Positions 13,790-63,868 of a DNA stretch of 64,000 bases are shown piece after piece (the first letter of the stretch is position 1; every line of letters begins with the position of its first letter). The notes under the pieces were generated by a model that was not told the DNA's origin, made no database searches, and was given only the letters and a program-made list of their open reading frames with translations. This DNA comes from Asterias rubens (Eukaryota). The position numbers and the translations under genes were made by a program. The stretch lies in assembly GCF_902459465.1 (NCBI RefSeq), contig NC_047063.1, positions 930,001-994,000 of the forward strand, written 5' to 3'.

Positions 13790-16700
13790 ATGCACTCCGT
13801 TCGTTATTTGACCAGCCACATCTTGGCCTTACCCCTTAGAACGATGGAGCAGAGTAGGAAAGTGAAGTGCGGCTTGTACATGCTGGCGTATTTGGATTAC
13901 ATCATCCTGGTGGCTGCGTTAACAGCAGGCCTTTATGCCAGTTGGCTCAAAACCGACAATGTTATGTTGATTGTCATCGGTGGTTGTGGCTTGTTCTTAT
14001 TTGCATTCTGTGGCATGTTGTACTACTACTTTGGCTTGGTGGATATTAGTTCCAGTTTCACTCATCTCTGGTGCGGTTGTCTTCTTGGTCTTATATCGTT
14101 TGTACACATTGAGACATACCAGGTTCAGGAGGTTCCTGTTGTAGTCACCACAGTGATGTTGATGACAAGTATGGTAATCAAAGTGTTCTGGGCTGTGGTG
14201 CAGCGCTTTTGTGGTTTAGTGACGTATTCATCTGTCTTATTAACCCATGTGGAGATATTTCAACTGGTTGGGTTCTCAGTGGCCTGTTTCTTACACACCC
14301 AAGCCATGTACGCAATGTGGTTGATGGTGTTTGCATGTGCTTTCACACTGATGACAATAAGGCTGAAAGTGATTCTTGCCATTCCTTGCCTTGCCATGTT
14401 TCTTACCATATCTATAGCAGCTTTCATTAACACAGTGGATTTGTCATTCAATGTTGTTGCATTGAGTTGTTTCTTTGTTCGTCTCTTTGTGGACCCCATT
14501 CTTGATTTGTACTACTGCAGTCTGTCAGGCATGGAGAGGTGGGATGTCGTGTTTAGCACACATCGATGGTTCAGGAAGATCTGTATCCTCTTGGTGCTTG
14601 CTTTTGAGATTGTGTTTTTTATTCTTGCTGGAGAGTCGACTGTTAACCATGAGGAGTGGTACTACGCTGTTCCCGCTTTCATCGTCTTTGGTTTGCTGTG
14701 GTTTTGTCTGCACATCATCTTCATCATCTCATGCTGGACATTTACAAACAAACTGACGGAATGCTACCAGGCATACTGCGGTGTACAGGGAGAGACCAAT
14801 AGGAATCTCGGTATGGTCATGGCAGCCAAAGGCATGCGCTTCGTCGCTCTCATCTCTCGTAACCTCATCTTCACAACGTTCATCACCACGTTGCTTCTGG
14901 GCGGGGTGTCTTGGCAGGATAATAATGCAGCTTTCATGGCAAGTTGGTTGATAGTGCTTCCTATTGAGAGTATGCTGCATGGTGTGCTGTATGAGTTAGG
15001 GACGTCACTTGGAGGAACATGTACGGGTTACGCAGTTGTTGGCCCATCAGCCTTCTGTAGGTAAGGGGCAAATGTGCTAACACATGAAGAACAATCAAGT
15101 CTTCTGAATTTTATTAAAGTGATCCCTGTCTACATGACAGTTAAAAATGTTGACTGGCACCCTCGAGCGAAAGGTTTTGACGAAACGGGGAGACCGCCAA
15201 ATTAGAGCAAAAAAAGCTCATTTGGTAGAGCGCCGGAATATCAATCAGGATGTTGCAGGGTCAAGTCCTGCCCAAGTAAATTTATCATTGCTCAACCCAA
15301 AATTATTTGAAAGTTTACCCAGTCAGTTTCCCTCTTGGCTATTACTTTTGTTTACAATGTTTACTGCACTAGTTTAGCTATCCATAACAATCTAGTTTCA
15401 GATGGGGCAAAAAAGTAAGAAATATTCAAAATACATTTTGAAATGTAAATCTGGTATTAAAAATTTGAAAAGATTGTTTTACATACATATACAATAGCCA
15501 AATCAGGCTCCAACTTCATAGAGCTGCATAAGCACAGAAAATGGCTAAGCACTAAAAAAATTACGCTTGACAGAATATCAAAATATCATGTCACATTTAT
15601 CATCTGTAACTAGATTGAGAAAGTTTTTGTCGGTTTTAGCGGTTGAAATGTTTGTGTTGTTTCCCTCCTTCTAACACAGAGTTGACGGGTCTCCGGTTCT
15701 ACTCCCAGCATCCAGCATGGAGGAAGTGAACAGTCGCTCTATTAGACTCCTCAGCACCATGCAGCGTTTCTTTCTGCATCACATGATCGATGTCTTCAGC
15801 TGTGATTTCTCCACCAGTGGGCTCAGTCTCACCACCCTCAAGGCTAAGATGAGAAATTTTTTCGCTCGGCAGATGCCAGATGGTCCGAGGTTCGACACTT
15901 ACCTGGTGTACTACAGTGGTCATGTGCATCCTAGTGGGGACTGGGCATTGGCAGGTAGAGTTTTTCGCTGCCCATTATTGTCTATCTCTTTAAAAATTCT
16001 TGATAAACATCTGAAAACCTGGTTCATACCTTATTGAAAGTGCATCATAGATCCTCTGTAGGCCTGACGACTTGTTGTTCCAACATAATCCAGTTAGGGT
16101 TCTGACGCCAAGTACATCCATGGAGATTTCGCTTTACTAAAACCTTCTCACAAGATAAGAATGGTTAGGGTTGAACAATCTGAAAACATTTAGGAATAAT
16201 TAGCAAAGACAATTTTAGGGTGAACTAAATATGGACAGGGAAAACAATGAAAGCATACCACTTTGCTTGTGTCATAATAGCAATTTTTCCAATGGTTGTA
16301 TTTTTATGCAAGTACTTAAAAGGACGTAAAAAGTGTTTCAACATATTATAGATATGCAGGCTTTTCCTGCATTTGAGTGAACTTAACTTGTGGATAAAAT
16401 GAGCTTTGAAATGGGTAAACTTGATATTGAACAAATCCATTCGCAACTCATCCTCACCGATTTACCATTTTGTGGATTACTTTCCCATAACTTATCCTGA
16501 AACAAATTTGAGGTGTTGTTTCCATTGGGTTGATGTTGTTTAGATGCCATACATAGGTTTATCACATTGTATTGGCATCACATTGTATTGGCATCCCTGA
16601 TCCATTGATGGCCTGCACAGCAGACACAGTTATTTTACTCACCCATATTTGTTAACTGGTAGATCATGGACTTCTCTTTCTTCTCCCAATGTTAATGTTT

Positions 16701-17572
16701 TTAAGCGACGTCCTCAATGGTTCTTACAGGAAAGTGAAGCGAGGACGTCTTCGCTTTTTCAAATCATATTGGCATGGGTTGTTCAGATTTGCCCTTGTAT
16801 GAGCACTTCCCCTGATCTTGAATGTGTGTGTAAGAGGAATGCAGCCTAGGTTCTGCTTTCGATTTTTTATTTTTTTTTGTTGGGGGGGGGGGGTTCAGAT
16901 TTTAAAAGATCTGTTCCCGCAAGCATACACAGAACAGGTTCCATTTTCTACAAACATTTCTTTTTTTAGATTGATAAAAAAAAAAACTAGTAAACATTAT
17001 TTGTCTTCTTCTTTGATTCAGACAATGAAGTCTTCAAGTTTGAGTCCATCCTAGAGCTATGGCAGGAAGCGAGCATCAAAGACTCTCAATCAAGACTCAT
17101 TCTGATTCAAGACGCAAACAGCTGTGTAGACTGGCTGAAACAAATCCCTAAGAACACTACCAACGTCATCGGATTGCAGGGCTGCGTCATTGGCAAATCA
17201 AAAGACTCTGAGACCGGGGCGTCGGTGGCAGTCGGGGACTTCACTCATGAATGGGTAGACTTCAATTGCTCTTCAGAGAGCAGCCACACGGCAACTTGGA
17301 AGGAGGAAGGGAGGAATGTGAAAGCCGTTTATGCTGTATCACATATGTGGAGTGAGTTTGAGTTCCATAGACCGACGGATGAGGATATTGAAGAGCACTG
17401 GCAGCAGAGCTTCCCTCGCTTGACGCACCCGTTAATCAAAGTCCTAAGAATTCCAAGTGCTCTGGACAAGTACAATTTTTCTTGCTGGAACTGCTTGAAA
17501 CGTTGGAAGATGAAGTGGTTACCCCCTCATGTCGTCAATACAGGACATGGTTTTAAGCTGGTTAGATCATGA
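13790..17572 (+). CDS. TMEM168: Transmembrane protein 168, conserved parental copy, 698 aa
   Basis: Exons 13790-15060, 15680-15954, 17022-17572 (2097 nt, phases 2 and 1). N-terminus MHSVRYLTSH resembles human MCKSLRYCFSH. Conserved motifs: MAAKGMR, LPIESMLHGVLYELG, DFSTSGLS, RFDTYLVYYSGH, GDFTHEWVDFNC and C-terminal NTGHGFKLVRS*. Confidence 0.95.
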
Positions 17573-22322: not shown

Positions 22323-23710
22323 GTTCAAGCAACTGTTTCAAAATGAAAATGTTTTTTGTTAGTGTAAATGTTGGCAGTCTTTCAGTATTTCAAGTTTTGC
22401 TATGAATCAGCATTATGAACTGCTTTATTATCAACATCTGAGTTTTTAGTTGACCTGATTACGACTTTTAAGCGAGGCCACTGGTGTCAAATACAGCATG
22501 TGGGTGATAATATGCAGACTGCAGACAATTGGACTGCTGGCCTTGATACAAGTAGGAATGTGGCGCAATCATTCAAACGTAGGGAATTCCCCTATGATGA
22601 ATAAAAACAATTTGCCTGTGAACAGCTGTTTAAATGAAAATGCTCTGTAACATGCATGCCATCTCAAAGCAATCTCAAATTGTACTATTTATAAATGAGA
22701 ATGATACTGATTTCTAAGAGTTTACTACACTTGCCCTGTCTGTTTGTGACTCATACATTATGCTACTGTGTTATGCAGACTACATTTAAGCCATGCTAAT
22801 GTTGTCTTGTAGTGTTGTATTGTCAGACTTAAAAGGGACTTCCCCAAACATGAGAAATTCAGATTTTGCAATAACAGGCCCCTGGCCCAAGTCCTAAGAG
22901 CACAATAAACTAGCTATGTATAACAACACAATGTTTTTACAAATAATGGTGGCCAGCCAAAATACATTAATTTCAACGTCCTCTTGTGCAGCGTTATCCT
23001 GCTCGTTTATGCTAGGAAGAAAAATCATTTAGTAAAAACTTTTGGCTTTGGCAGCTGATACCTAGTAGGCAGAGGGTTCATAACATGACACTACTTACAC
23101 GAACACCAACACAAAATTGTGCGCTTTGGCCCTGCTAATGGCTTTATAAGAAGTACATACCCTTACTATAAATGGACCCTTCTGATCAGAGGGATATTAT
23201 AAATTTGTTGCGTATGAATGAGCTGTGTGGCTGAATTGTATGCACTCAGTCTTGAAGCATTATCAAATCTTCAAACTTGTTAGCTTTATAGACTGCTTCT
23301 CAGCATTTTATTTTGTAAAATTTGACTTGTTTTACCATTTATGGGGATACACACCTATGTTTTTCTAGGTACTTACATGTATGTTCTGACATTCTTAATG
23401 TATTTTCCTCGCCCTACTCACCCTAACCCTAGTGTGAAAGTCAGAGCTCAGAGCAGTCACCATTGTATGATTGTCTTCTGACTATAGGTAATAATAAAGA
23501 AGAGCTGCGTTAGTCTGATCGAAAAAACAAGGAAATGGCACTTAGTTACAGCAAAACTGCAAAAGCTTTTGCAGCGACAACTGCTTTATCAGATGCAACA
23601 AAGGAGACAAGCAAGTACTATGCAAGAAAGATACGAGTGAATTCAATTAAGGGTGTATGTAGTCCAACATGTACAGCCAATCAACGTAGGTCTCCCCCCC
23701 CCCCAGTCTG

Positions 23711-23973
23711 ATTTCGCAATACTTCTAATATTAGCAGCTTGGTTTTAACTGAATGTGTCATTGTGTTAGGTAATGGGGAAAATCCCGCCACATAGCCTAC
23801 CCTAGAAATGAGAAATTTGCCAGCTACTAGAGGGCTATATAAACAAAACACAGACGTGGCCTAGAGTCAGTGTAGTATTTTTGTCAACCAGAAAGGAAGA
23901 CTGCCAATGAGGGTAGAAAGAAATGTTCTGCAACTGAGATTCTCAAACTGTTGCCGATTACATTTGAGTGGAG
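23711..23973 (+). promoter_or_regulatory. Paralogue A promoter and non-coding exon 1 (C/EBP + kB + TATA)
   Basis: ATTTCGCAAT 23711-23720, GGGGAAAATCCC 23775-23786, TGAGAAAT 23809-23816, TATATAAA 23836-23843, donor GAG|GTAAGA at 23973. Confidence 0.7.
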
Positions 23974-24058
23974 GTAAGATTCATTTTTTTAATATAAAAT
24001 ATGTTTCTTTAAGATTAATCCAGGCCTGCTTACTGCATCCATGGCCCTGGTCATAGAC

Positions 24059-24227
24059 AACAATGGTGTCACTCGACAATGATGTCTTTTGACTATGGTG
24101 TCATTTGACATTTGACTATTGTGTAATTTGACTATGGTGTCATTGACAACGGTGTCATTTGACTATGCTGTCATTTGACTATGCTGTCATTCTACAATGG
24201 TGTCTTTTGACTATGCTGTCATTTGAG
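24059..24227. repeat. ~16-bp minisatellite in intron 1 of paralogue A
   Basis: Units of GGTGTCATTTGACTAT with variants. Confidence 0.85.
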
Positions 24228-25812
24228 TTGTGTATGATTTCGTTTGAGTAGGCCACCTTGCAAAAAGTATTGCTGAACCTGATTGCTTGTAACGTGACAG
24301 TGCATAGAATGTTTTTATGAACTGAGACAATTGATTTATTGAACAGCAGTACTTAACTGTATTTCATTTTACAGACATGATATTTGGTCCTTGGACAAAG
24401 TGGGAATATTTCATCTAGTACAAAGGCTGACCACCATTATCACATGGTACTTTTAAATACATTTCACAGTTTTTCAGAAATGTTCAAGGGCAAAAAAAGT
24501 TGGAAATGAGACTAAAAAAGGAAAAACATCATGCCTCATTTTACCTTATTTTATGCATGGCTTCAACAGGCATGCCAGCCAGTAGCTGGGGCTGGGTACT
24601 AGCTTTAACTTATGTCATACCCTTGGAATTTTGTGTATCAATCTGCAAGACCAACCTGGCATTATACGACCAAGTTGGCAGAGTTTTGCATGATTGGTCA
24701 TGGAAAATGTTGTGTTCGGTTATTAGACCAATAGGAGTACTCAATTTGTTTTCTGGCCTGTGAGAAGGTGCAACAAATTGAGAAACAATTCTCATTTGGG
24801 TTTTGTAGCTTCTGTGGTTAGGCATGCCCATGCAGATGACTCATATTGTAATTGAGTCATGATTGTATGATCGGGGATTTTTGGCCAGTTCATTTGGGAA
24901 TAATCAACTCAATGGAACTTTTAAGCTGTGAGAGATTAATGCACAATATTTTTTTGTTTTCTGAAAAGTTTTCTGGTTTGAAATGAGTTTGGGGGAAAAA
25001 AAGGGTTTTAAGCTTTATGAATAATAAATAATAATAACTCTTGTATAGCGCATTTCACAATAACTGTATCAATGCGCTTTACATTAGTGCCCTGGTCATA
25101 GGGCCAATAACATCCCTTTTAATGTTTCTCAGCTCCCTTGGGAGTATATAACCTGGGCAACCATACATATCGCTCCATAGGCTTTTTCATTCACAATATC
25201 AACCTCTACCCTCGCAGGTACCCATTTATACCTCTGGGTGAAGAGAAGCAATCATAGTAAAGTGTCTTGCTCAAGGATACAAGCATCACTACCGGGATTC
25301 AAACCCGCACTCTGATGACTTGAATTTGATGCTCTTAATCGGCCATGACACTCTAGGCTTAAGCTTTGTATGCATTGTAGTGCGTAACAGTGAAAAGCAC
25401 TACCTCGAATGAAACAAAGTGTTACTACTTTTATGCAAAGTAGTTAGTATACTGTAAGAGGGCATTGTAAATTGTTCATTAATAGTTCACCACAACCTGT
25501 TTCTGCTAAAGTCTACATTTTCACATTTTACCTTTACAAAATTGAACCCAGAGCTATCTATTTATTTTAAATAGTCCCATTCCTTATTTTGTTAATTTAC
25601 TTACTAGGTAGTACTTACTTTTGTGTGTGTTTTGATGGTGGTTTGTTCACATCTCTTTGTAAATTTTAATATAGCCTCCAATGGCGTTATTTTTTTTATA
25701 TAAACTTACTGTATATTTTTTGTATGTAACTATTTTGTATGTAAACCTTTTTATATGTATTGTGATTTTTAATGTAATTTGGCCGTTGGCCATGAATGTA
25801 AAAAGAAATAAA

Positions 25813-25847
<35 letters not shown>

Positions 25848-25930
25848 AACATATTGTATTTAATGTTACTCTGTAAAAGAACCAAGTTTCTCTCTAAACC
25901 TTTGTTCTTCTTTCTGCATTTATAGGTTAG

Positions 25931-28900
25931 ATGGTTTCAACCATGGCGGAAAATGACAGCAAAAAGTGTGGCCTGAACTGGGTTGATGCTGTGGATAGTT
26001 TTGTCCTTAGTTTATCTGTCTTGTTGGTTGGCGTGAGTGGCCTGTTGATTTCTTACAGCATTGATCAATTAGTCATTGGTATTGTTGTTTGCATTGGATT
26101 GCTGATACTGATTGGTCTCCTTCGGTTAATTTACTTTTGTAAATCAAACAGCAACAGCAGTACCGGTAAACATCTCTTCAATGTCATCATTATCTGCATC
26201 CGTTTATGGTGTAGCGGTGTTCTTGGTCTGATGTCTTTTGTAGATATCAGTGACATCCAAAATGATTGGAAAACTGCAATAACATGGATGCTGGTTGCAA
26301 GCATTATCATCAAAGCTGTCTCTTCATTTATCCAGCGACGTCTTGGATTGATTAAATACTCCCCAAGTCCAGTGACTTGGGCTGAGGTGTTAGAGCTTGT
26401 TGGTTTCTCGGTGACTGGATTATTAGTTATTTTGCCAGAGGACAAGACACTTTTTTCCATATATGCTGTCTGCTTGATTTTGGTTTCCTTTGCTGTCATT
26501 ATTGTAGCAGTAAGACTTGTACCTTGCAACCCCTCCGTCATTTTCATTTTGTTTGCAGTTCTTTTTTGTCAAGGTGTTTTTTTCATTACTGTTGATGTAC
26601 CTTTCTTCGATGCTGCATTGGTTTGCTTCGCTGGCCGCCTGTTTATGGACCCTCTCTCTGATTTGTTTTCTAGAAACATATCCATCAATGAGAGACTGAA
26701 TTGTGTATTCCTGAGTATACCTGGATGTTTGCAAAAGGTGTTCATAATAATAGTCATTGTGTTTGAGAGTGTCTTTCTTTTTCATGCTGGAGTTTTTGAT
26801 ATCTACCATCAAGAATGGTACTGGATAATGATCTTTGTTTTCCTACTTTTGCTTTGGATTTGCTACCATTCATATTCCATTCATTTGTACTGGAAACTCT
26901 CCAACAAAATCTCAGAGTGCACTAAGGCCCATAAAACCTTGCAGGGAAAAGCTAGCATGGAGAAAATGATGGCAGCAAAGGGGATGCGTTTACAAGCTCA
27001 GTTTGCGCACTGTCTCGCCTTCTATACATTTGGCTCCACTGTCCTACTTGGTGTAGTTACACTGTTGATTCCAGATGGAGATCAACCATGGCATAAAGAC
27101 GAAAAAGCAGCAGTTGCAGCAAGCTTTTTGACAGTGGTTCTTGTAGAGGGAATGTTCTATGCAGCCACAGATACACTCCGGAAGTCCCTACCAGGGACTT
27201 GTACAGCTTGTGTCATCATGCCTCCTTCAACGTCCCATAGGTAAGAATTACAAAAACTAAACAACTATTCTAAAGTCATCATCTCATACCAAGTATTGAG
27301 TGCAATGAAGAAGAGTAACCTCACTTGTGAGGAGTTATTGCATCTTTGGTGGAATTGTGTTGATGAATTTGGGGTAAAATAAAAATAACCAAAATATTTT
27401 GACCTGTGACCAATTCGCCCAATTTCGCCCAATATCGTCCCAATAATCTTTGTTGTGGCATTTGGGAGTCAATGTTCCTGTGTGTTACAGTGTAGCACAT
27501 TATTTAGGCACCACAACATTGCAAAGTGTCAGACATTAGTTGTGTGTGACATTTTGTGCAAGGAACCAATACTCAGAGAGTACATCAGAATAAATTTATA
27601 GGTTATGGATTCACAACTATTGACAATCGCTAATAACTAAAACACAGACAGTACTACTAATAAATATCTGACTGAGAAAGAATTTGTTGCTGAGGTCACA
27701 AAGGAATAAAATGAAAGGCCTCAGAGCTCAGCAGTACACTGCTGGCATTTTATTGCAGGCTGCTCTTCCATGACAACAAAAATAATAATAGCCAAATCAA
27801 AGCACTGGTTCTCCACAGCCTTTTGGTTGAATATTTTGTGTCACTGGCTGTCACTTCATATGTAAGCTTTTAATGTTTTCTTTCTATATGTAAATATAGA
27901 CAGTTGAACGAGTTGCGGAGATCAATTATGGATTTCTGTGATCGTAATGCTATACCTTGTAGCATTGAATCCTTCGTGGATGGGCTTTCAATCCAAACCC
28001 TAGAGGGCAAGCTTAATGGCTTCTTTGCTCAGACAAATCCTGCTACTAGTCAGCGGAGGTATGACAGCTACTTGGTTTTCTACTGTGGTGATGTAGATAG
28101 AGATGGCAAGTGGGAGTTGACAGGAGGTTAGTTTGATTTTATTTCATTAGGTTTTATGATTTTTCTTACATTAATGTTATTGTTTTATGTAGTATTGTGG
28201 TATAACTTGTGCAATTTTACATTTTAATATTTTACATGTTGCTGTACAATAGGATTGTAAATTTCATGTATTTTTGTATACCTGATGAATAAACCGTTCA
28301 ATTCAATTCAATCCAATTCAATTCAATTCAATTCAATTCAATTCATTTCAATTCAATGAAAAAACTTTCTGGGTAAAAAAACGGTGTTTGTGGCAAGTAC
28401 TTTAAGCAACTACCAAGTCAGCCAAGTAAACAAAGGTGACAAAGTAGCCCTTGAGTATCTGAGAACTAAAAGAACTAAAAGTTGTGGCAGAGCGATTAAG
28501 AGCATGGAACTCAAGTTCTGGTGGTTAAGTCAAAGGAGTATGGGTTCGAATCCCGGTCGTGACACTTGTGTCCTTGAGCAAGATACTTTACTCTCTTCAC
28601 CCAGGGGTATAAATTGGTACCTGTGAGGGTAGAGGTTCATACTGTGTTCGAAATAGCCTTCTGAGCGCACGGCTGTATACTCCTCGGGAGCTGAGAAAGA
28701 TTAAAGAAATGTTATTGGCCTAATAATGACCAGGGTACTAATGTAAAACATATTGATACGGTTCTTGTAAAATGCGCTATAAGAACTAGTTGTTATTATT
28801 ATTATTATTAAAGGACACTAGTATCCAAGCACCAAGTCCATCATTGATACCTAAGGACTTTGATCTCCCGAGTGTGAGTACTGTATAAAACCATTACTGG

Positions 28901-29796
28901 TTACTTGCAGCCAACCAATCGGTTTGGCAGGCTGGACTCAAGCTGTTGTGTTTCTGACCAGGACACTATGAGTCCAGGTACAGATAGACATGTTCTTTAT
29001 TAGCAAGACACCTAACAATTACTGCTTGGATGGGATCTAAGCCGTAGGTCCCTTTTGTGTTTTGTTCCACATGTTTAAGAACCCAATACACTTTATCTCT
29101 GACCACCATTAAGGGAAGTTTGTTAACCCATTGTACGGGTATACAGATACAGACGTTAGAGTATTGTCAGTCAATGGCAAAAAACCTTTGAATTGAATAG
29201 TGCACTTGGTTTTTACAGTCACGCTAAAAAATGCTTCCATTATTTTTGTCGTCTCTTCAACAGGAAAGTTCAAGTTTGAAAACATGCAACGGCTATGGAA
29301 TAACTGCAATACTGAGGGATTCCAATCTAGGCTTATCTTGATCCAAGATGCAAAACACTCCAAAGACTGGCTGGAGAAGATCGCCAATGATGAAAACAAC
29401 GTAGTTGCAATACAAACTTGCAAACTGAGTCCATCAGTAGACCCTGAAACTGGGGTTGTGCCAAGGGTTGGGGATTTTACCCGTGATTGGGTAGAGTTTA
29501 ATAGCTCAACTGAAAACAGTATCAATTGGAAGGAGACGGGGAGAAAAATCAAAGCAGTTTATAAAGTTTCTCCTCCATGGAGTGACAATGAATTCCGAGT
29601 GCCTAGTGAAGAAGATATGACAGAGTTCACCTCAAAGTTCCCCGTTAAATTGCAATGTTTGATAACAATTGCTTTGGAGATAGCTGAATTTAAAGAAAAA
29701 ACCATTTGCCCTACCTGTTGGAAACGTTTTATGATGAGTTGGTTTCCCCCACCTTTTATTGATACTAGACATGGCTTTAAGCTAGTTAAATCTTGA
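25931..29796 (+). CDS. Diverged TMEM168-like paralogue A, 689 aa (685 aa from Kozak ATG at 25943)
   Basis: Exons 25931-27240, 27900-28126, 29264-29796 (2070 nt), same intron phases as the parent. Retains MAAKGMR, RRYDSYLVFYCGD, GDFTRDWVEFN and RHGFKLVKS*. Non-coding first exon ends at donor 23973. Confidence 0.88.
28486..28770 (+). mobile_element. tRNA-derived SINE
   Basis: TGGCAGAGCGATTAAGAGC...GGGTTCGAATCCCGGTCGTGACACTTGTGTCCTTGAGCAAG; ends in a (TTA)n tail near 28795. Confidence 0.7.
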
Positions 29797-30115
29797 TTGG
29801 ACATGGCTTTAACTAGTTTAAAAGTCTTAATCGGGCATTGGCTTTATAAAGCTAGATAAATCATGATTGGACATGACTTTAACTAGTTAATCAGCTAATT
29901 AAACCTAGATTGGAAATGGCTTTAACTAGTTCAGAAGTCTTAATTAGCAATGGTTTTAAGCCAGTTAAGTCTTGATTGGACACCACATGGCTTTAAGTAT
30001 AGTTCAAAAAACTTGTATAGCAATGGTTTTAAGCTAGTTAAATCTAGATTGGACATGGCTTTAACTAGTTCAAAAGTTTTCAATCTAGTAAAGTCGTGAT
30101 TGGAGAAATATTACA
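29765..30115 (+). repeat. Degenerate ~32-bp tandem repeat derived from the TMEM168-like C-terminal codons
   Basis: About ten variants of GGACATGGCTTTAAGCTAGTTAAATCTTGATT; the first is the real GHGFKLVKS* coding end. Confidence 0.8.
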
Positions 30116-30244
30116 TTATGTCATGAGAAAGATAACATTTGGTTAATAAAGGGCTATCGTAGATTTGAATAAAAAACAAAGCATGAGTACAATAATCAGA
30201 AGTTTTCAGAATGGTCAAATTGGCTTGCATTGCTTGTTACACAA

Positions 30245-31762
30245 CCTACATTTTTCTAACTAATCTGTAATGACCCAATAGCTTAATTTGGCCTGTTGCT
30301 TTAGACTCAAATTCTGGATTATGTGCCAAACTCTTGGCTTGTATCATCAAAGGCACACATCTACTTGCCCTACTTTTGTAATTAGACATTTGTTGTTATA
30401 TTTTGAGTAACTATTATGTAACATGTAGTTTCTATTTAAAATGATTGATTGGGGGAAACAAATTAAGAAGACAATTTTAGAGTAACAGGAGATGTTTTAG
30501 AGATGTACACGATAAACCTCCACCCCCTGCTATATCACTTGCCACTTAAGTCTCTGTGTTATGTTATGTGAATTACTTAATGACCATACTAAATCAGCAC
30601 ATCAAAATAAGCACCAAACAAAATGCCTGACAAAAACATGAAACTGTTTTCATTAATAAAAAATAAAAAAAGTAACTTCTACAATTTAATGACGTAATTA
30701 GACCTAAAGGTTGATTGTATGACGTGTGTCTTGACCAAGAGGGTTAGTGGATTTACGCATCCCAAAACCAAAGAAACATTTTAGATTTATAGTAACAATG
30801 CAGTAAGTAATTTGTAATTATTGATGCTTTTTGATTTTTCATTTAAAGCTTCCTGAGAGTATTTTTGTAAATGATTCAATGCTGTATAAATGCACCTTGG
30901 GTTTTTATTTTTGTACAAAATAATATCCGAACAGTTTTCATTAATAAGGCCTATGGCTGTGGGCTGCAGCTACAGTGTGTTCAAGAATCCCTGTGAGTTT
31001 AGTGATACCAAATACACTACGCATGCCAAGGGCCTCTGAACAAGGGCCTCTCCAATCAAAACAATGAGCCAACAGTCATAACAAAATTGAACTATCTGCA
31101 CCAATCAGAAACAATTAACTGTCAAAAGGAAAGCACTGTTTGCAAAGTATTAAAAAAAATTGTTTACATCGAAGACAATATTTCAGAGTGTCTGTATAGA
31201 TTTCAATAATAAATAAAGAAAATAGAGGTTAAAAAAATGGACTAAAAAAACAATCTCTTCATCTCAGGAGCCTGTTTTTTCCCCTTCTGAATGCAAGAAT
31301 TGGAAAACAAATGCATTTGAACATGAATCAAAATGAATGCAGTCTTCAAAACTTTGCTATAGTATAGTATCTAAATTATAAACCCTGCTTTTCAAGAATA
31401 CAATTTATGCTGATTGTGTCAATACCATGTTGGTTCCCTCTTGCAAAAATAAATAAAAACATTATTTTGTATTTCATTATCTATAAAATAGCTATCAGAT
31501 AGTAAGTTTGACATTGATGTAACTAAAAATGCATATTGCGGGATGAAGTATTTAAAATGCAGACTGTTGTACTTGGTACATGTAGGAATGAGAAGCAATT
31601 GTTCAAAGGTATAAGGAATTCCCCTATGTTTAATAAAATAATTTTGCTTGTGAACAGCTGATGTTTTAAAAGTGAAAAGTCCTTGTAGTATTGTATTTCT
31701 CAGAGGTAAAACGGAGACAAAGTCCACTGGCCAAAGTTGATTAAAGACACTGGACACTATTG
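30245..31762 (+). repeat. 1.5-kb near-identical segmental duplication, copy 1
   Basis: Matches 40426-41942 with only scattered substitutions and small indels. Confidence 0.92.
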
Positions 31763-32071
31763 GTAATTGTCAAAGACCAGTCTTCTCACTTGGTCGTCGA
31801 AGTTGCGAGATATGAATGAAATAAAAAACACCCTTGTCACACGAAGTTGTGTGCTTTCAGATGCTTGATTTCGAGACCTCAAATTCTAAACTTGAGGTCT
31901 CGAAATCAAATTCGTGGAAAATTACTTCTGTCTCGAAAACTACGTCACTTCAGAGGGAGCCCTTTCTCACAATGATTTATACTACCAACCTCTCCCCATT
32001 ACTCGTCACCAAGTAAGGTTTTATGCTGATAATTATTTTGAGTAATTACCAATAGTGTCCACTGCCTTTAA
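31741..32071 (+). mobile_element. TTAA-flanked MITE, family copy 1
   Basis: TTAAAGACACTGGACACTATTGGTAATT ... AATTACCAATAGTGTCCACTGCCTTTAA. Confidence 0.8.
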
Positions 32072-32778: not shown

Positions 32779-33007
32779 ATTTCGCAACAAGGAGCTGTGT
32801 GGAGTGTGTAATGGGGAAATTCCCTGACACGTAGCCAGATATGAGAAATTTGCCAGCCCCTAGATCGCTATACAAACAAAGCACAAACTTGACCTAGAGC
32901 CAGTGTGGTATTTCTGTCATACAGAGAGGACCGCTGCTAATGAAAGGGTGAAATAAACCTTCTGCAACTGAGCTTCGCAAACCGTTGTTGTTGATTACAT
33001 TGTGGAG
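32779..33007 (+). promoter_or_regulatory. Paralogue B promoter and non-coding exon 1 (C/EBP + kB + TATA-like)
   Basis: ATTTCGCAAC 32779-32788, GGGGAAATTCCC 32813-32824, TGAGAAAT 32842-32849, TATACAAA 32869-32876, donor GAG|GTATGT at 33007. Same motif order as paralogue A. Confidence 0.7.
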
Positions 33008-33047: not shown

Positions 33048-33425
33048 TTAACAGTAATATTGGTAATTACTCAAAATAACTATTAGCATAAAACCTTGCT
33101 TGGTAACGAGTAATGGGGAGAGGTTGATAGTTTAAAACATTGTGAGTAACGGCTCCCTCTGAAGTGACATAGTTTTTGAGAAACAAGTAATTTTCTGAGA
33201 ATTTGATTTCGAGACCTCAGACTTAGAATTTGAGGTCTCGAAATCAAGCATCTGAAAGCACACAACTTCGTGTGACAAGGGTGTTTTTTCTATCATTGTT
33301 ATCTCGCAACTTTGACGACCAATGAGCTCAAATTTTCACAGGTTTCTTATTTTATGCATATGTTGAGATACACCAAGTGAGAATACTGGTCTTCGACAAT
33401 TGCCAATAGTGTACACTGCCTTTAA
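33048..33425 (-). mobile_element. TTAA-flanked MITE, same family, inverted
   Basis: Reverse complement of the 31741 element body; ends CAATAGTGTACACTGCCTTTAA. Confidence 0.75.
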
Positions 33426-34518
33426 CATTTACAAGGCCTGCAACACTGCATCCGTGCCCGCTGGCTATAGACCTTTTGCATTTTAGATACATGCATGAAT
33501 TCATTTGAGATAAGGCCCCCTTGCAAAATACATATTGCTGAACATGGAACGCTGCCATGGGAACAGAAACAGAAAATGTGTACAATACGTTTAATGAACT
33601 GTGACAGTGATTTATTGGAAATCAACTGTATTTCATTTTACTTGTGAACTGCATTATGCATGACTTTATTATCTGGCTGTATCTTTTGTAGCTTTCAATA
33701 ATGTAATTCGGTACCCTTGGAATTTTGTGTCAAACGAAACTAGGCATAGTGTCTGAAGTTGGCGGGGTTATACCTGATGGTCAGCAAAATGTTGTGTTCG
33801 GGTAATGGACCAATGACAAAAATGTTGGCCCCTTAAGGGGCCAATATTTTTTTTATGTTTAACTTTTGCTAGGTTAGAATTAGCATTATCTGTTGCCCGG
33901 GTGCCTTGTTTTATTTTTGTGTATAAATGGGACAGCGAACAAAGGGCCAGTTCTTGAGGCTAAGGCAAAAATCAACTCAATACTGTTCAGCTGTGCGAGG
34001 TTAGTGCACAATTATATTTTTCACGTTGAACAGTTTTCTGGTTTTAAATGAGTTTGAAAGGAAAGAGTTTAGTTGCGTAAAAAAAACATCAAATTTGCCT
34101 AACTGATGTGATCATTTATTTATCGTGTGAGTGTAATGCACACGCCATTGTAGTGTGTGGCAATGAAAGGCACAACCATCATTACAATGAAACAATGTTT
34201 GACTTTTAGGCACAATTGTTTAGTACTGCCTGTCTCTGTTTTGCAAACAGGAGAGGGCGCTATAAGTAGTTTATCACAACCTGTTTCTGCTAAGCAGCAC
34301 ATTCTGTGCTAAGCAAATTTTCACATAACACCTTTACAAAATGGAAGTCGGAGCTATCTCACTGGGTTTCATTTGTTGTCCTAAAAACTGAGTCTCTTTC
34401 TAAACCTTTGTTTTTCTTTTTTCATTTATAGGTTAAAGATTAACGGCTCGTCAATTCTAAAAAGTGATCAAATCTTCCATCTTTTAGTCTGAGCAACTGT
34501 TATTAGCTGGTTTCAACC

Positions 34519-35822
34519 ATGGAGGAAAATGACAGCAAAGTGAAATGTGGCCTGTGCTTCGTTGTTTTGGACTTAATTGTCCTTATATTTGCATTGGAGG
34601 TCGGCTTGTGTGCCCTGTTGATTTCTACCAGAATTGGTCCAATATTCATTGTTATTGTTGCTTTGATTGTGATTGGACTAGCAATAGTGATTGGAGTCTG
34701 CCTATACTGTTGTAAACCAAACTACAAAGGCAACGACAGTCTCTCAAAGGAGGTCAATATGTGCAACCGTTTATGGTGTAGCTTTGTTCTTGGTCTGATG
34801 TCTTTTGTAGATATCAGTGGCATCCACAACTATGTTATTACTGTAACAACATGGATGCTGGTTGCAAGCATTATCATCAAAGCTGTCTCTTCATTTATCC
34901 AGCGATGTCATGGATTGATCAAATACTCCTCCAGTCCAGTGAGTGAGGTTGAGATGTTTGAGCTCTTTGTGTTCTCAATGACTGGATTGATTGCTTTGCC
35001 AGAGGACCAGGCATTTCTTTCTAAATATGCTTTATGCTTGATTTTTGTTTCCTTTGCTGTCATTATAGTGGCAGTCAGACTTGCAGGTTGCATTTACAAC
35101 CCCTTCAAAATACTCATTTTGATTGCAGTCCTTGTTTGTCAAATAGTATTTTTCAATACTATTGATGTGCCTTTCTACAATGCTGCATTGGGTTGCTTTG
35201 TAGGCCGCCTGTTTATGGACCCACTTTTTGATTTGTTTTCTAGCAACATAACTGCAATTGAAAGATTGAATTGTGTATTCAGTGTCCGTGAATGTTTACA
35301 ACAGATGTTTGTGATAATAGTCATTGTGTTTGAGGGTGTCTTCCTTTTTCATGCTGTAGTTTCTGACATCTACCACAAAGAATGGTACTGGATAATTCTC
35401 TTTGTTGTCCTACTTATATTTTGGATTTGCAACCATTCATATTCCATTCATTTGTTCTGGCAATTTTCCAACAATATCTCAGAGTGCACTAAGGCCCATC
35501 AAGCCTTGCAGAACAATACTAGTATGGAGATGATAATGGCAACGAAAGGGATGCGCTCACAAACTCAGTTTATACACCATCTCGCCCTCTATACATTTGT
35601 TTCCACTTTATTTCTTGGTGCAGCCACACTGTTGATTCCATGTGTGGTGCACCAATGGCATAAAGAGGACAAGGCGGCACTTGCAGCAAGCTTTTTGATA
35701 GTGGTTCTTGTAGAGGAAATGTTCTATGCAGCCACAGATTTACTCCAGCAGTCCCTACCAGGGGCTTGTACAGCTTGTGTCATCATGCCTCCTTCAAAGT
35801 CACAAAGGTAAGAATTGAGACC

Positions 35823-40090: not shown

Positions 40091-40425
40091 CCTGTGATGG
40101 CTCTGTGGCCAAATATGGCCTGTTGTTTGGACTCAAATTCTGGATTCTTGTGACAAACTCTTTGCTTGTATCATCAAAGGCACAATCCCACCTACTTGCC
40201 CTACAATCGTAGTAAGATATTTAATTTTGTATTTTTGCATAAATGATGTTGTCTAAAGGTTCTATTTAAAAAAAAAAAAAAAGGTTAGGGGGAAAAAATA
40301 AACAAATATTGAGATTTACTTGTAGAGGTTTTTACAGGGCAGGAAAATTTAAGATGTTAATGTACCCCCACCCCCTCTGCTCTCATGTGCCACTTTCAAT
40401 TTAATTCAATTCAGAGACATTTCAA

Positions 40426-41942
40426 CCTATATTTTTTCTAACTAATCTGTAATGACCCAATAGTTAAATGTGGCCCGAACTCAAAATCTGGATTCTTGTG
40501 CCAAACTCTTGGCTTGTATCATCAAAGGCACACATCTACTTGCCCTACTTTTGTAATTAGACATTTGTTGTTTTATTTTGAGTAACTATTATGTAACATG
40601 TAGTTTCTATTTAAAATGATTGATTGGGGGAAACAAATTAAGAAGACAATTGTAGAGTAACAGGAGATGTGTTAGAGATGTACACGATAAACCTCCACCC
40701 CCTGCTATATCACTTGCCACTTAAGTCTCTGTGTTATGTTATGTGAATTACTTAATGACCATACTAAATCAGCACATCAAAATGAGCACCAAACAAAATG
40801 CCTGACAAAAACATGAAACTGTTTTCATTAATAAAAAATAAAAAAAGTAACTTCTACAATTTAATGACGTAATTAGACCTAAAGGTTGATTGTATGACGC
40901 GTGTCTTGACCAAGAGGGTTAGTGGATTTACGCATCCCAAAACCAAAGAAACATTTTAGATTTATAGTAACAATGCAGTAAGTAATTTGTAATTATTGAT
41001 GCTTTTTGATTTTTCATTTAAAGCTTCCTGAGAGTATTTTTGTAAATGATTCAATGCTGTATAAATGCACTTTGGGTTTTTATTTTTGTACAAACTAATT
41101 TCCGTACAGTTTTCATTAATAAGGCCTATGGCTGTGGGCTGCAGCTACAGTGTGTTCAAGAATCCCTGTGAGTTTAGTGATACCAAATATACTACGCATG
41201 CCAAGGGCCTCTGAACAAGGGCCTCTCCAATCAAAACAATAAGCCAACAGTCATAACAAAATTGAACTATTTGCACCAATCAGAAACAATTAACTGTCAA
41301 AAGGAAAGCACTGTTTGCAAAGTATTAAACAAAAATGTTTACATCGAAGACAATATTTCATCAGAGTGTCTGTATAGATTTCAATAATAAATAAAGAAAA
41401 TAGACGTTAAAAAAATGGACTAAAAAAACAATCTCTTCATCTCAGGAGCCTGTTTTTTTTCCCCTTCTGAATGCAGGAATTGGAGAACAAATGCATTTGA
41501 ACATGAATCAAAATGAATGCAGTCTTCAAAACTTTGCTATAGTATAGTATCTAAATTATAAACCCTGCTTTTCAAGAATACAATTTATGCTGGTTGTGTC
41601 AATACCATGTTGGTTCCCTCTTGCAAAAATAAATAAAAACATTATTTTGTATTTCATTATCTATAAAATAGCTATCAGATAGTAAGTTTGACATTGATGT
41701 AACTAAAAATGCATATTGCGGGATGAAGTATTTAAAATGCAGACTGTTGTACTTGGTACATGTAGGAATGAGAAGCAATTGTTCAAAGGTATAAGGAATT
41801 CCCCTATGTTTAATAAAATAATTTTGCTTGTGAACAGCTGATGTTTTAAAAGTGAAAAGTCCTTGTAGTATTGTATTTCTCAGAGGTAAAACGGAGACAA
41901 AATCCACTGGCCAAAGTTGATTAAAGACACTGGACACTATTG
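40426..41942 (+). repeat. 1.5-kb near-identical segmental duplication, copy 2
   Basis: Matches 30245-31762. Confidence 0.92.
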
Positions 41943-42105
41943 GGTCAACAAAAACATGGGTGTGCATAAACCTTTTGTTAATGCACACTAAAGCTCTGTT
42001 TATAACAAGCTGGCTTCCGCGTGTCGGGCATGCAAGATTATCATGCGGAACACTGGTTTTAAAGCGCACTGTTTACACCAATCAAAAACAATAAGCCCCA
42101 ATCAT

Positions 42106-43276: not shown

Positions 43277-43662
43277 TTAAAAACACTGGACACTATTGGT
43301 AATTGTTAAAGACCAGTCTTCTCACTCGATGTATCTCAGCATATGGATAAAATAACAAACTTGTGAAAATTTGAGATCAATCGGTTGTCGAAGTTGCGAC
43401 ATAATAATGAAAGAAAAAACACCCTTGTCACACAAAGTTGTGTGCTTTCAGATGCTTGATTTCAAGACCTCAAGATCTAAATATGAGGTCTCAAAATCAA
43501 GTTCGTCGAAAGTTACTTCTTTCTCAAAAACTACATTACTTCAGAGGGAGCCGTTTCTCACAATGTTTTATACTATCAACCTCTCCTCATTACTCGTGAC
43601 CAAGTAAGGTTTTATGCCAATAATTATTTTGAGTAATTACCAATAGTGTCCACTGCCTTTAA
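43277..43662 (+). mobile_element. TTAA-flanked MITE, same family
   Basis: Same TIRs and body as 31741-32071. Confidence 0.8.
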
Positions 43663-43968
43663 ATCTCATTTTTGGTTTTGTATACTAGTTAATTGATTTT
43701 ATCTCATATTTTGTATCACAAAGTATGCCATTCCCAAGCACATACAATTATCATCATCAAAAGGTACATTAAACTAAAATGATTGGCAGAATGAAAATCT
43801 TGCTTTTGAGATTGTCTTTAAAGTTTGAATACTTGGGACACCTACTTAGTCATCCCAGGAGATCGAGACTGCAGATGTTTACATTCATGTGTGAGTGTGC
43901 TAATATGTAGAGTGTAGTGAATGCCCACATGTCAATAGAAGGTCAAGCATTGTTTTCCTTTACGTAGA

Positions 43969-44283
43969 GGTAATTCCCCACAGATGAGAAATCTAATTTT
44001 GCAATAATTTTGTCTGGAGGTAGCGGTTGCTTCCCCCTAAAATGGGAAATCTGATTTCGCAATCATTTTTTTTGTATCTGTTCAAAAGGGAAACGTAAGG
44101 AGGTAAATCCCCAATACGTAGTGAGAAATGAGAAATTGTGAGCTTATATAGGCTATGTATACAACACAAAGGGCCATTTGGTGCAGCAGTCTGACGGAAC
44201 GGATCACTGCAATTGAAGCTGAGAGGAAGAAAGGTTCTGCTGCTTAGACTTTTGAGCTTTTACCATTAATGATTTATGTGAAG
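43969..44283 (+). promoter_or_regulatory. Paralogue C promoter and non-coding exon 1 (two kB-like and several C/EBP-like sites)
   Basis: GGTAATTCCCC 43969-43979, TGAGAAAT 43985, TTTTGCAAT 43997, ATTTCGCAAT 44054-44063, GGTAAATCCCC 44102-44112, TGAGAAATGAGAAAT 44122-44136, TATATA 44145-44150, donor AAG|GTAAGG at 44283. Confidence 0.6.
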
Positions 44284-45073
44284 GTAAGGTCTCTTTTGTG
44301 TTTAAATACATTTGTTTGTGTAGTGTTAAATGTTAGGTTCATAGATTGTATTTTTGTCAATGTATTGCTGATTTAAATTATACGCAAATACAGCTTAAGT
44401 CACATGTGAAAGGTTTCAGCAGTGTTTTTGCTTGCTGATAAAAGAGCAAAATAAATGGTATTTATGAACAACTCAAGTCCCTTCACGTTTAGCGAGGTGA
44501 CAGCAGGTACCAACCTCATATTTGACTGCGTCATTCATGAACACCAACCCTCAGAAATCTGAGGTCTCAGTTTCAGATGTTTTGGGTGAAAAAAAATCCC
44601 AACCATATTACTTCGAGGGGAATCTATTCACAATTAATAGTTTGTACAAACATGATAACACTTATTTTGTTAAGAGTGTCATCAATGTATGACCAAGTAC
44701 CTTTCAAGAGTAAAATTAGCTACAATTCTCATTTGTACCATGTTGCCTTTCCATGGCAGTTTTTTGCAACTAAATGTTGTGTAGTTTAAGACAGATATTT
44801 TATGTGATATGGAGCGTTCATGTTGTTGTTAGTATTTTTTTTTTTTTTTAACATATCAAGAAAGCTGCCTAGCAATTGCTCAAAACATGCCTGTCAACAA
44901 TAGACCTTTTGGCTTCTAGCCGGTATGTGAACAAGATAAGGTAAAACAAGAAGGAGGGGAGAAAATTAAACCCTTGCAAAACATGGTTTTCAATCTAATA
45001 AACAAAAAATAAAGGTTGGTTACAATACGTGTGAGAAAAGGGAATATTTATAGACCTCTTGCATAGGTCACTA

Positions 45074-45517
45074 CACTGGGGTCAAACAATGGAACTAAGC
45101 ACCATTTGCACAATGCACATCTCTCAGCCAATGATAGGTCTTCATTTGACCCATGCACAACTCCAATCCAATGATAGGTCTTCATTTAACCCAAGCACAG
45201 CTCCCATCCAATGATAGGTCTTCATTTGACCCAAGCACAACTCCCATCCAATGATAGGTCTTCATTTGACCCATGCACAACTCCCATCCCATGATATGTC
45301 TTCATTTGACCCATGCACAACTCCCATCCAATGATAGGTCTTCATTTGACCCATGCACAACTCCCATCCAATGATAGGTCTTCATTTGACCCAAGCGCAA
45401 CTCCCATCCAATGATAGGTCTTCATTTGACCCAAGCACAACTCTCAGCCAATGATAGGTCTTCATTTAACCCATGCACAACTCCCATCCAATAATAGGTC
45501 TTCATTTGACCCCAGTG
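45074..45517. repeat. 40-bp minisatellite (10 units) bounded by 13-bp inverted repeats
   Basis: Unit CCAATGATAGGTCTTCATTTGACCCATGCACAACTCCCAT from ~45128. CACTGGGGTCAAA at 45074-45086 and TTTGACCCCAGTG at 45505-45517. Confidence 0.85.
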
Positions 45518-45939
45518 AGGACACCTTTTAAACTTGTGATGTCCTCAAGGCTCCATTAATTACTATTTTTAAAATAAACAATTCTGTAATATTCCTTTAA
45601 TTTCAGCCAACAAACTTAAATGCTTAATAATGCAACAACACAGAGACTCACAATCACCACTGCAACCAGCCAGCTGTTTCTTGTAAGCAAGATAGTCTTA
45701 GCTTAGCAAATTTCTCCACAAAAGCTTAGGAATTTATGTCTGGATCAAGTTTCACATTCATTGATGTGTTCATGATTTAAAAAATGTATCTTCCCTCTAA
45801 AACTATATTTTCTCTGTCTTTTATCACAGGTTGATGGTTCTTCTAATCTAAAGGCGGAGCAGATCTTCTAAACTTTGGTGAACTCTACTAACTTTGCAAT
45901 CAGAGGAACTGCTATTCTCGACCAGTTTGTCTACCTGCC

Positions 45940-52385: not shown

Positions 52386-52472
52386 GTTGGTCTGATGTCT
52401 TTTTTAGATATCAGTGGCATCCAGAATGATTTTACAACTGCAATAATAACAGGGATGCTTCTTGCAAGCATT
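52386..52472 (+). pseudogene. Short TMEM168-like relic
   Basis: GGTCTGATGTCTTTTTTAGATATCAGTGGCATCCAGAATGATTTTACAACTGCAATAATAACAGGGATGCTTCTTGCAAGCATTGG closely matches 46207-46290 of paralogue C. Confidence 0.75.
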
Positions 52473-63860: not shown

Positions 63861-63868
63861 TTTTTCTT

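What the first reader, a model, noticed from the sequence alone, without database searches (positions are those of the whole stretch)
23711..23973. Promoter motifs conserved while the spacers diverge (phylogenetic footprint across three paralogues)
ATTTCGCAA(T/C), GGGGAAA(A/T)TCCC, ATGAGAAATTTGCCAGC and the TATA element keep their order between 23711-23843 and 32779-32876 while intervening bases differ. Paralogue C (43969-44150) keeps the same motif types rearranged and multiplied. Motif retention under spacer decay suggests selection on factor binding (inference).
Basis: partly seen in the sequence, partly recalled or inferred. Interest (0 to 1): 0.7.

Follow-up and report, generated by a model that had tools for sequence, protein, structure and literature searches.

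The report
Starfish TMEM168-like genes' shared inducible-type promoter
This stretch is the promoter and untranslated first exon of a starfish-specific copy of the membrane-protein gene TMEM168, and it shares with its sister copies a few short boxes resembling NF-kB and C/EBP binding sites that have decayed more slowly than silent coding sites, which suggests, without proving, switch-on by immune or stress signals.

Summary
All four motifs sit at the stated coordinates in paralogues A and B, in the same order. Paralogue C carries a colinear proximal copy plus two extra upstream units.

RNA contigs splice 23973 to 25926. So 23711-23973 is the promoter plus non-coding exon 1 of a TMEM168-like gene of Asterias rubens.

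The selection inference is only partly supported.
- **A versus B:** the promoter as a whole is as diverged as silent coding sites (79% against 78% identity). Exact runs of 18-19 bp also occur in intron 1, so this pair alone shows no footprint.
- **Against the older paralogue C:** the kB box, the 17-mer and the TATA columns keep 76-81% identity. Spacers keep 45% and silent sites 54-55% (binomial p about 0.0006 and 0.008).
- **TATA:** it is not conserved. It reads TTTGTAAA in the A. amurensis orthologue of A and TATACAAA in B.

I also found distal kB modules. A about 30-bp kB / ATGRGAAAT / bZIP-site unit occurs three times in the 418-Mb genome, all at this locus.

NF-kB and C/EBP as the binding factors rest on consensus matches and on those factor families being encoded in the genome. 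Inducibility is untested.

Verdict: an ordinary kind of promoter for a lineage-specific, fast-evolving gene family. Modest interest.

The parts
22561..22628 (+). Far-distal module of paralogue A: bZIP-like TGGCGCAAT (22561-22569), ACGTAG, palindromic kB GGGAATTCCCC (22582-22592), AATTTGCC, CAGCTG
   Evidence: It is 78% identical to 31562-31678 and 41742-41858. It is conserved in A. amurensis apart from TGGCGCAAT becoming TGACGCAAT.
22835..22872 (+). Distal composite unit of A: kB GGGACTTCCCC, ATGAGAAAT, GATTTTGCAAT. It is followed at 22911-22933 by CTAGCTATGTATAACAACACAAT, which resembles the TATA region of C.
   Evidence: It is 83% identical over 41 bp to C 43968-44007. It is identical in A. 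amurensis.
23711..23720 (+). C/EBP-type bZIP site ATTTCGCAAT of A, about -157 from the predicted start
   Evidence: It matches T(T/G)NNGNAA(T/G). It is identical in A. amurensis.
23775..23786 (+). kB-type site GGGGAAAATCCC of A; the minus strand reads GGGATTTTCC, a match to GGGRNWYYCC
   Evidence: 11 of 12 identical to B and 10 of 12 to C. Identical in A. amurensis.
23808..23824 (+). Unassigned box ATGAGAAATTTGCCAGC. The core ATGAGAAA is the longest stretch invariant in all three paralogues.
   Evidence: Identical in A. amurensis.
23836..23843 (+). TATA element TATATAAA of A
   Evidence: Not conserved: TTTGTAAA in the A. amurensis orthologue.
23854..23973 (+). Non-coding exon 1 of A. The 3' end at 23973 is exact. 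The 5' end is approximate: somewhere in 23827-23874, and a TATA-directed start would be near 23868, in TCAGTG.
   Evidence: joint 23971/25924 (cut +2), GT..AG, seen in runs X6 and X8. The X8 contig covers 23874 but not 23826. Bin depth implies about 120 nt covered.
25926..27240 (+). Exon 2 of A, with the ATG at 25931. It encodes the multi-pass membrane half of a TMEM168-like protein.
   Evidence: joints 23973>25926 and 27240>27896.
31614..31624 (+). Far-distal kB site of B (GGAATTCCCC)
32779..32876 (+). Proximal promoter of B: ATTTCGCAAC (32779-32788), GGGGAAATTCCC (32813-32824), ACGTAG (32829), 17-mer (32841-32857), TATACAAA (32869-32876)
   Evidence: The A. amurensis orthologue is 97% identical. 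It differs by ATTTTGCAAC and TATATAAA.
32902..33007 (+). Predicted non-coding exon 1 of B. Both ends are inferred by homology with A; the donor reads GGAG|GTATGT.
   Evidence: Not checked with reads.
43962..44063 (+). Two upstream composite units of C: ACGTAG, GGTAATTCCCC, ATGAGAAAT, ATTTTGCAAT (43962-44005), then TTCCCCC, ATGGGAAAT, GATTTCGCAAT (44031-44063)
   Evidence: These and the A distal unit are the only three matches to the composite pattern in the whole genome.
44099..44162 (+). Proximal promoter of C, colinear with A and B: GGAGGTAAATCCCC, ACGTAG, ATGAGAAATTGTGAGC, TTATATAG and CTATGTATAC
   Evidence: It is 100% identical to A. amurensis from 44100 to about 44262.
44176..44283 (+). 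Predicted non-coding exon 1 of C, inferred by homology; the donor reads GAAG|GTAAGG
   Evidence: A weak hint of transcription comes from the word shares of runs X2 and X3.

Best explanation
23711-23973 is the proximal promoter and the about 110-nt non-coding first exon of paralogue A in a tandem array of TMEM168-like genes in the starfish Asterias rubens. The array reads: parental copy P, then A, B and C.

A, B and C inherited one promoter by tandem duplication. Its elements are:
- a Rel/NF-kB-type site;
- a C/EBP-type bZIP site;
- an unassigned ATGAGAAAT box;
- an ACGTAG box;
- a TATA-like element.

This promoter looks itself built from repeats of one short kB / ATGRGAAAT / bZIP-site unit. 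Copies of that unit survive about 1.0 and 1.3 kb upstream of A, about 1.3 kb upstream of B, and twice just upstream of C.

Between the young pair A and B everything is still similar at about the neutral level. Against the older paralogue C only the motif islands stand out above the neutral level, which points to purifying selection on factor binding.

The most likely mechanism, which is inferred and not shown, is signal-induced transcription. A Rel-homology factor and a C/EBP-like bZIP factor would bind side by side and cooperate, as in vertebrate acute-phase and cytokine promoters. That would make these fast-evolving genes responsive to immune or stress signals.
For: **Promoter and exon**
- GT..AG joints at 23973>25926, 27240>27896 and 28126>29264 appear in RNA-like contigs of runs X6, X8 and X1. 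Coverage begins between 23827 and 23874.

**Gene identity**
- The proteins are named 'transmembrane protein 168-like [Asterias rubens / amurensis]'. The C-terminal part (residues 440-682) of paralogue B's protein is 37% identical to bird TMEM168.
- The family is confined to this locus in the genome.

**Motif excess**
- The composite pattern has 3 distinct sites in 418 Mb, all here (6 overlapping pattern hits), and none in the reversed control.
- The promoter is not a dispersed repeat.

**Selection test**
- C against A/B: the promoter plus exon 1 is the only colinear non-coding match (E 4e-15).
- Motif columns are 81% and 76% identical, against 45-46% for spacers. Permutation p is 0.005-0.007.
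- Silent-site identity is 54-55%; binomial p is 6e-4 and 8e-3.

**Orthologues**
- The kB sites, the 17-mer and the bZIP sites are intact in all three A. amurensis promoters.
- The only changes inside bZIP sites are CG>TG at a degenerate position.

**Factors present**
- The genome has two Rel-homology-domain loci and many bZIP_2 loci.

**Consensus matches**
- The consensus strings GGGRNWYYCC and T(T/G)NNGNAA(T/G) come from my own knowledge of the NF-kB and C/EBP literature.
Against: - A-B alone shows no footprint. The proximal promoter is 79% identical against 78% at silent sites.
- Exact runs of 18-19 bp occur in intron 1, and other non-coding 40-bp windows reach 85-90% identity.
- The motif set was chosen after looking at the sequences. 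The C-based tests reduce that circularity but do not remove it, and MAFFT may have anchored the alignment on the same motifs.
- The TATA element is not conserved: A. amurensis A has TTTGTAAA and A. rubens B has TATACAAA.
- The estimated 5' end of the X8 contig (about 23854) is only about 11-18 nt after the TATA, nearer than the canonical 25-30 nt.
- The A. rubens / A. amurensis comparison (3-8% divergence) is too shallow for a footprint. Of about 7 substitutions in 23700-23973, 2 fall in motifs (both in the TATA) against 1.2 expected.
- No binding, chromatin or induction data exist for this locus. The proximal and distal kB-like sites of C each miss the consensus by one base.
- ATGAGAAAT has no assigned factor.
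Confidence: 0.55

Rival explanations
1. Neutral leftovers of duplication. The shared boxes would simply be the parts of a duplicated promoter that have not yet mutated, with no selection on binding. Their resemblance to kB and C/EBP consensus sequences would be coincidental or no longer functional.
For: - A-B promoter identity equals the silent-site identity.
- Equally long exact runs occur in intron 1.
- The whole promoter plus exon 1 block is 57-59% identical to C, against a neutral 54%.
- The TATA element drifts between orthologues.
- In this assembly C is frameshifted.
Against: - Motif columns exceed both spacers and silent sites in the A-C and B-C comparisons.
- The same three box types recur, in the same order, in the older internal duplicates (distal units of A and C), where surrounding sequence no longer aligns.
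- C is an intact, conserved ORF in A. amurensis and in a more distant starfish, so its promoter is probably in use.
Confidence: 0.25
2. A real, constrained promoter that is read by other factors. The GGGGAAAWTCCC and ATGRGAAAT boxes could serve NFAT, CSL/Su(H)-like (TGRGAA) or IRF-like (GAAA repeats) proteins. The ATTTYGCAAT box could serve a PAR/ATF-type bZIP, and the 'TATA' ATAAACAA a forkhead factor. The output could then be tissue-specific rather than inflammatory.
For: - ATGRGAAAT carries a TGRGAA core, and A and C read GAAATGAGAAA.
- The far-distal bZIP site reads TGACGCAAT, a CRE/C/EBP hybrid, in A. amurensis.
- CTATATAAACAAAAC contains a TRTTKRY forkhead-type match on the minus strand (read directly from the sequence).
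- The TATA changes while AAACAA stays.
- RNA contigs exist in runs whose treatment is unknown, which fits basal expression.
Against: - The A and B sites match the 10-bp kB consensus exactly.
- All six kB consensus sites in the 64-kb window lie upstream of these three genes.
- kB next to a C/EBP site is a well-known cooperative pair (my own knowledge of the IL-6, IL-8 and SAA promoters).
Confidence: 0.3
3. Gene conversion between paralogues, rather than selection, keeps the promoters alike.
For: A 1.5-kb block, 30242-31763 and 40423-41943, is 97% identical although the flanking genes are only about 66-80% identical. That block is single-copy in A. amurensis. Recent duplication or conversion therefore does happen at this locus.
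Against: Conversion would homogenise spacers and boxes alike. Here spacers are 45-69% identical and boxes 76-95%. There is a 30-bp length difference between A and B and no long identical tract.
Confidence: 0.05

Closest known systems
Vertebrate acute-phase and cytokine promoters with paired C/EBP and NF-kB sites (IL-6, IL-8/CXCL8, serum amyloid A); comparison from my own knowledge of the literature
   Same: A TATA-containing core promoter. It has a kB decamer about 90 bp upstream of the start and a C/EBP-type site close by: 34-64 bp away in the proximal promoters and within 20 bp in the distal units. The kB sites occur in several copies.
   Different: The genes are invertebrate TMEM168-like membrane proteins, not cytokines or acute-phase proteins. 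A conserved third box (ATGAGAAAT) sits between or beside the two sites and has no assigned factor. No induction or binding data exist. Any resemblance to the SAA layout is by analogy, not homology.
Canonical TMEM168, represented by the parental copy P at 13790-17572 in the window and by Patiria miniata, sea urchin and vertebrate orthologues
   Same: A, B and C derive from it. They share the multi-pass N-terminal half and, for A and B, the C-terminal domain.
   Different: - P keeps the motif YYSGH, while A and B read FYCGD.
- No kB consensus site or GATTTYGCAAY box occurs anywhere upstream of P in the window.
- Patiria has only the canonical gene, followed directly by the Myb-domain gene.
- A and B evolve fast, with dN/dS about 0.77.
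Phylogenetic footprinting by paralogue comparison (sometimes called 'phylogenetic shadowing' of duplicated promoters)
   Same: Conserved islands appear in otherwise diverged duplicated upstream regions.
   Different: Only three paralogues and one close sister species were available. The youngest pair carries no signal beyond neutrality. The statistics rest on 37 motif columns.

Membership tests
RNA polymerase II promoter with a non-coding first exon | A transcribed exon immediately downstream, spliced to the coding exon | tested here: met
   GT..AG joint 23973>25926 in two runs (X6, X8). Depth is about zero at 23600-23799 and rises in 23800-23999.
RNA polymerase II promoter with a non-coding first exon | TATA box (TATAWAWR) 25-35 bp upstream of the mapped start site | tested here: inconclusive
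   TATATAAA lies at 23836-23843. Contigs only bracket the 5' end to 23827-23874, estimated about 23854. No CAGE or raw 5' ends were available.
RNA polymerase II promoter with a non-coding first exon | TATA element kept in orthologues and paralogues | tested here: not met
   The A. amurensis orthologue of A has TTTGTAAA. A. rubens B has TATACAAA while A. amurensis B has TATATAAA. C has TTATATAG and TATGTATA.
NF-kB/Rel-responsive promoter | One or more matches to GGGRNWYYCC near the start site | tested here: met
   23777 (-), 32814 (+/-), plus distal sites at 22582, 22835, 31615 and 41795. None occurs elsewhere in the 64 kb. The sites of C miss the consensus by one base each.
NF-kB/Rel-responsive promoter | The organism encodes Rel-homology factors | tested here: met
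   PF00554 matches above the cut-off at two loci (contig C21 at 12.64 Mb, contig C1 at 23.45 Mb).
NF-kB/Rel-responsive promoter | Factor occupancy and stimulus-dependent transcription | not testable with these tools
   No ChIP, ATAC or challenge RNA data could be read. Run metadata are coded, and read laying allowed only one call.
C/EBP plus NF-kB composite element | bZIP site matching T(T/G)NNGNAA(T/G) adjacent to a kB site | tested here: met
   ATTTCGCAAT (A, C) and ATTTTGCAAT (A distal, C distal) match. ATTTCGCAAC in B misses the last base. The distal units have kB and bZIP sites within about 20 bp of each other.
C/EBP plus NF-kB composite element | Cooperative activation by the two factors | not testable with these tools
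   Needs reporter or binding assays.
Phylogenetic footprint (purifying selection on motifs) | Motif columns more conserved than a neutral baseline from the same locus | tested here: met
   A-C is 30/37 and B-C 28/37, against silent-site identity of 0.54-0.55 (p 6e-4 and 8e-3). Permutation p is 0.005-0.007. Caveat: the motif set was chosen after the fact.
Phylogenetic footprint (purifying selection on motifs) | The same signal in the A-B pair and in the orthologue comparison | tested here: inconclusive
   A-B motifs are 35/37, but those columns were chosen on this very pair. The promoter overall is neutral and intron runs are as long. A. amurensis is only 3-8% diverged.

The most novel reading that the evidence does not exclude
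After its split from the Patiria lineage, the Asterias lineage created a new fast-evolving family from the housekeeping-type gene TMEM168: A and B with the YYSGH motif changed to FYCGD, and C truncated to the membrane half. It placed that family under a Rel plus C/EBP-driven inducible promoter that was assembled locally by serial duplication of one about 30-40 bp kB / ATGRGAAAT / bZIP unit. That would be a young immune- or stress-responsive gene family whose regulatory module can be watched being born.
Probability: 0.25. Interest if true: 0.55.

Novelty: new member of a known kind. Interest (0 to 1): 0.33.

Why it matters
If the boxes really are Rel and C/EBP sites under selection, these genes would be candidate inducible immune or stress genes in an echinoderm. 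They would also show how a duplicated housekeeping-type gene gains a new regulatory programme through local multiplication of a small composite element. In addition, that would hint at a role for TMEM168-type proteins, whose function is poorly understood in any animal. As it stands, this is a well-delimited, testable promoter, not a surprising discovery.

Tried and rejected
- **Dispersed repeat or transposon-borne promoter: rejected.** Within the own genome the 281-bp promoter matches only itself and paralogue B. The composite unit occurs only at this locus.
- **A-B footprint by sliding identity and run lengths:** no excess over introns.
- **More distant orthologous promoters:**
  - Patiria miniata has no A/B/C copies.
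  - The only more distant C-type hit lies on a 2.4-kb contig with no upstream sequence.
  - The ENA contig behind P0004 gave no DNA.
  - The protein searches returned no other Asteriidae members.
- **Reads for B and C:** not possible. The word-share trick for exon 1 of C gave only a weak hint.
- **Literature:** nothing on TMEM168 in echinoderms or on its control by NF-kB that bears on this locus.
- **Repeat in intron 1:** Rfam and tRNA scans found nothing.
- **Position-weight-matrix scan (REL, CEBPB, TBP):** not done, as no matrix library was available offline. IUPAC consensus strings were used instead.

Full report
**What is there**

The window is from the starfish Asterias rubens.

The window carries a tandem array of TMEM168-type genes, all on the + strand:
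- **P**, a parental copy. Its large exon is 13790-15064 and it keeps the motif YYSGH.
- **A**, **B** and **C**, three derived copies.
- Small relics at 46968-47057 and 52386-52472.

The family occurs nowhere else in the 418-Mb genome. Patiria miniata has only the canonical gene. There it is followed directly by the Myb-domain gene that lies downstream of the array in this window. So A, B and C arose after the Asterias lineage split from the Patiria lineage.

**The observation**

The 3-way alignment shows that the proximal promoter of C is colinear with A and B, not rearranged: a kB-like site, ACGTAG, ATGAGAAAT, then a TATA-like element. Two extra units of the form TTCCCC / ATGRGAAAT / ATTTYGCAAT sit just upstream of it.

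- A has a distal unit at 22835-22872, 83% identical to the first unit of C.
- A far-distal block with a palindromic kB site lies at 22582. It is copied at 31615 and 41795.

All matches to GGGRNWYYCC in the 64 kb lie within 2.4 kb upstream of A, B or C. The composite pattern occurs at three sites in the whole genome, all here, with none in the reversed control. The promoter is not a dispersed repeat.

**It is a promoter**

Contigs of two public runs join 23973 to 25926 across a GT..AG intron. They continue through 27240>27896 and 28126>29264. The finding therefore covers the proximal promoter plus a non-coding exon 1, and the ATG is at 25931.

Coverage is near zero in 23600-23799. One spliced contig covers 23874 but not 23826. 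The 5' end therefore falls 0-30 nt beyond the TATA element (23836-23843), and bin depth suggests about 23854. Contigs cannot fix a start site. The 'about 30 bp after the TATA' prediction is compatible with this evidence but not shown.

**Is there a footprint?**

*A versus B: no.*
- Non-coding DNA aligns along the whole duplicated unit at about 79% where alignable.
- Silent coding sites are 78% identical, with dS 0.26.
- The proximal promoter is 79% identical.
- Exact runs of 18-19 bp occur in intron 1, longer than the 17-mer.

*Against C: yes, moderately.* The silent-site difference to C is 0.45-0.46 (dS about 0.7).
- The promoter plus exon 1 is the only colinear non-coding similarity left.
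- Within it, the kB, 17-mer and TATA columns are 81% (A-C) and 76% (B-C) identical, against 45-46% for spacers.
- Random placement of equal-sized windows gives p 0.005-0.007.
- Against the silent-site baseline the binomial p is 6e-4 and 8e-3.

The box set was chosen after looking at the sequences. These p-values are therefore indicative, not exact.

**Orthologues**

The syntenic A. amurensis locus (L001, L002) is 92-97% identical, too close for a footprint.
- All kB sites, the 17-mer, ATGRGAAAT and the bZIP sites are intact in it.
- Changes inside bZIP sites are CG>TG at a degenerate position.
- The TATA is not kept. It reads TTTGTAAA in A. amurensis A, and the B copies differ (TATACAAA against TATATAAA).
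- The far-distal block of C (40423-41943) is a 97% copy of the block upstream of B and is single-copy in A. amurensis.

**Mechanism (inferred)**

- The A and B sites match the NF-kB decamer consensus exactly. ATTTYGCAAT matches the classical C/EBP consensus. Both consensus strings come from my own knowledge.
- The genome has two Rel-homology loci and many bZIP_2 loci.
- The likeliest reading is cooperative Rel plus C/EBP activation, giving stimulus-inducible transcription as in vertebrate IL-6, IL-8 and SAA promoters.
- ATGAGAAAT, the best-conserved core, has no assigned factor. Candidates from its sequence are CSL-like (TGRGAA), IRF-like or an NFAT/Rel half-site.
- No binding or induction data could be obtained.

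**Context**

- A and B evolve fast, with dN/dS about 0.77, and read FYCGD where P reads YYSGH.
- C is frameshifted in this assembly. It is nevertheless a conserved 257-aa membrane-only ORF in A. amurensis and a 236-aa ORF in a more distant starfish. Its promoter is therefore probably functional.

**Verdict**

This is a known kind of promoter architecture on a lineage-specific gene family, with modest interest until induction or binding is shown.

Noticed in passing
window 45940-46714; L001:20934-21707: Exon 2 of paralogue C is frameshifted in this A. rubens assembly (216-aa and 81-aa ORFs). It is one intact 257-aa ORF in A. amurensis and in ENA protein P0004. A 236-aa ORF ending at the same ...SKIVIN site exists in another starfish assembly (P0015, 67% identical). 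The C lineage looks like a conserved membrane-only truncated TMEM168-like gene. The frameshift may be an allele, a recent loss or an assembly error.
   Followed up: partly
window 25931-27240 vs 34507-35808: Exon 2 of A and B has dN/dS about 0.77 (dS 0.26). A/B against C gives about 0.5-0.6. All three are saturated against the parental copy. The protein evolution is unusually fast for a multi-pass membrane protein.
   Followed up: partly
window 25931 (start codon) and protein P0003: The public protein model for A (347 aa) starts inside exon 2. Spliced RNA contigs join exon 1 to exon 2 upstream of a 437-codon ORF. The full protein should be about 690 aa, as called in A. amurensis.
   Followed up: partly
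window 30242-31763 and 40423-41943: A 1.5-kb block is duplicated at 97% identity between the A/B and B/C intergenic regions. It is single-copy in A. amurensis, so this is a recent duplication or conversion. It carries one of the kB sites.
   Followed up: partly
window 25013-25321 (+) and 28527-28813 (-): Inverted copies of a dispersed repeat lie in introns 1 and 3 of A. Contig depth there is 10^4 to 8x10^5 in all four runs. There is no Rfam or tRNA match.
   Followed up: partly
window 45023-45582; 24050-24226; 29766-30080: Tandem arrays: a 40-bp unit repeated about 14 times in intron 1 of C, a TGACTATGGTGTCATT-like array in intron 1 of A, and an array of roughly 65-bp units downstream of A that is greatly expanded in A. 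amurensis (L001:13321-14720).
   Followed up: no
window 27234>27951: Runs X1 and X8 show an extra joint with CC..GC ends that skips the start of exon 3. It may be an artefact, a paralogue chimera or a minor isoform.
   Followed up: no
window 31785-32071, 33058-33425 (-), 43277-43662, 63861-63998: A repeat of about 290-370 bp, 84-91% identical between copies, flanks the B promoter on both sides in opposite orientation and lies upstream of C. It is probably a mobile element that displaced the B equivalent of the distal unit of A.
   Followed up: no
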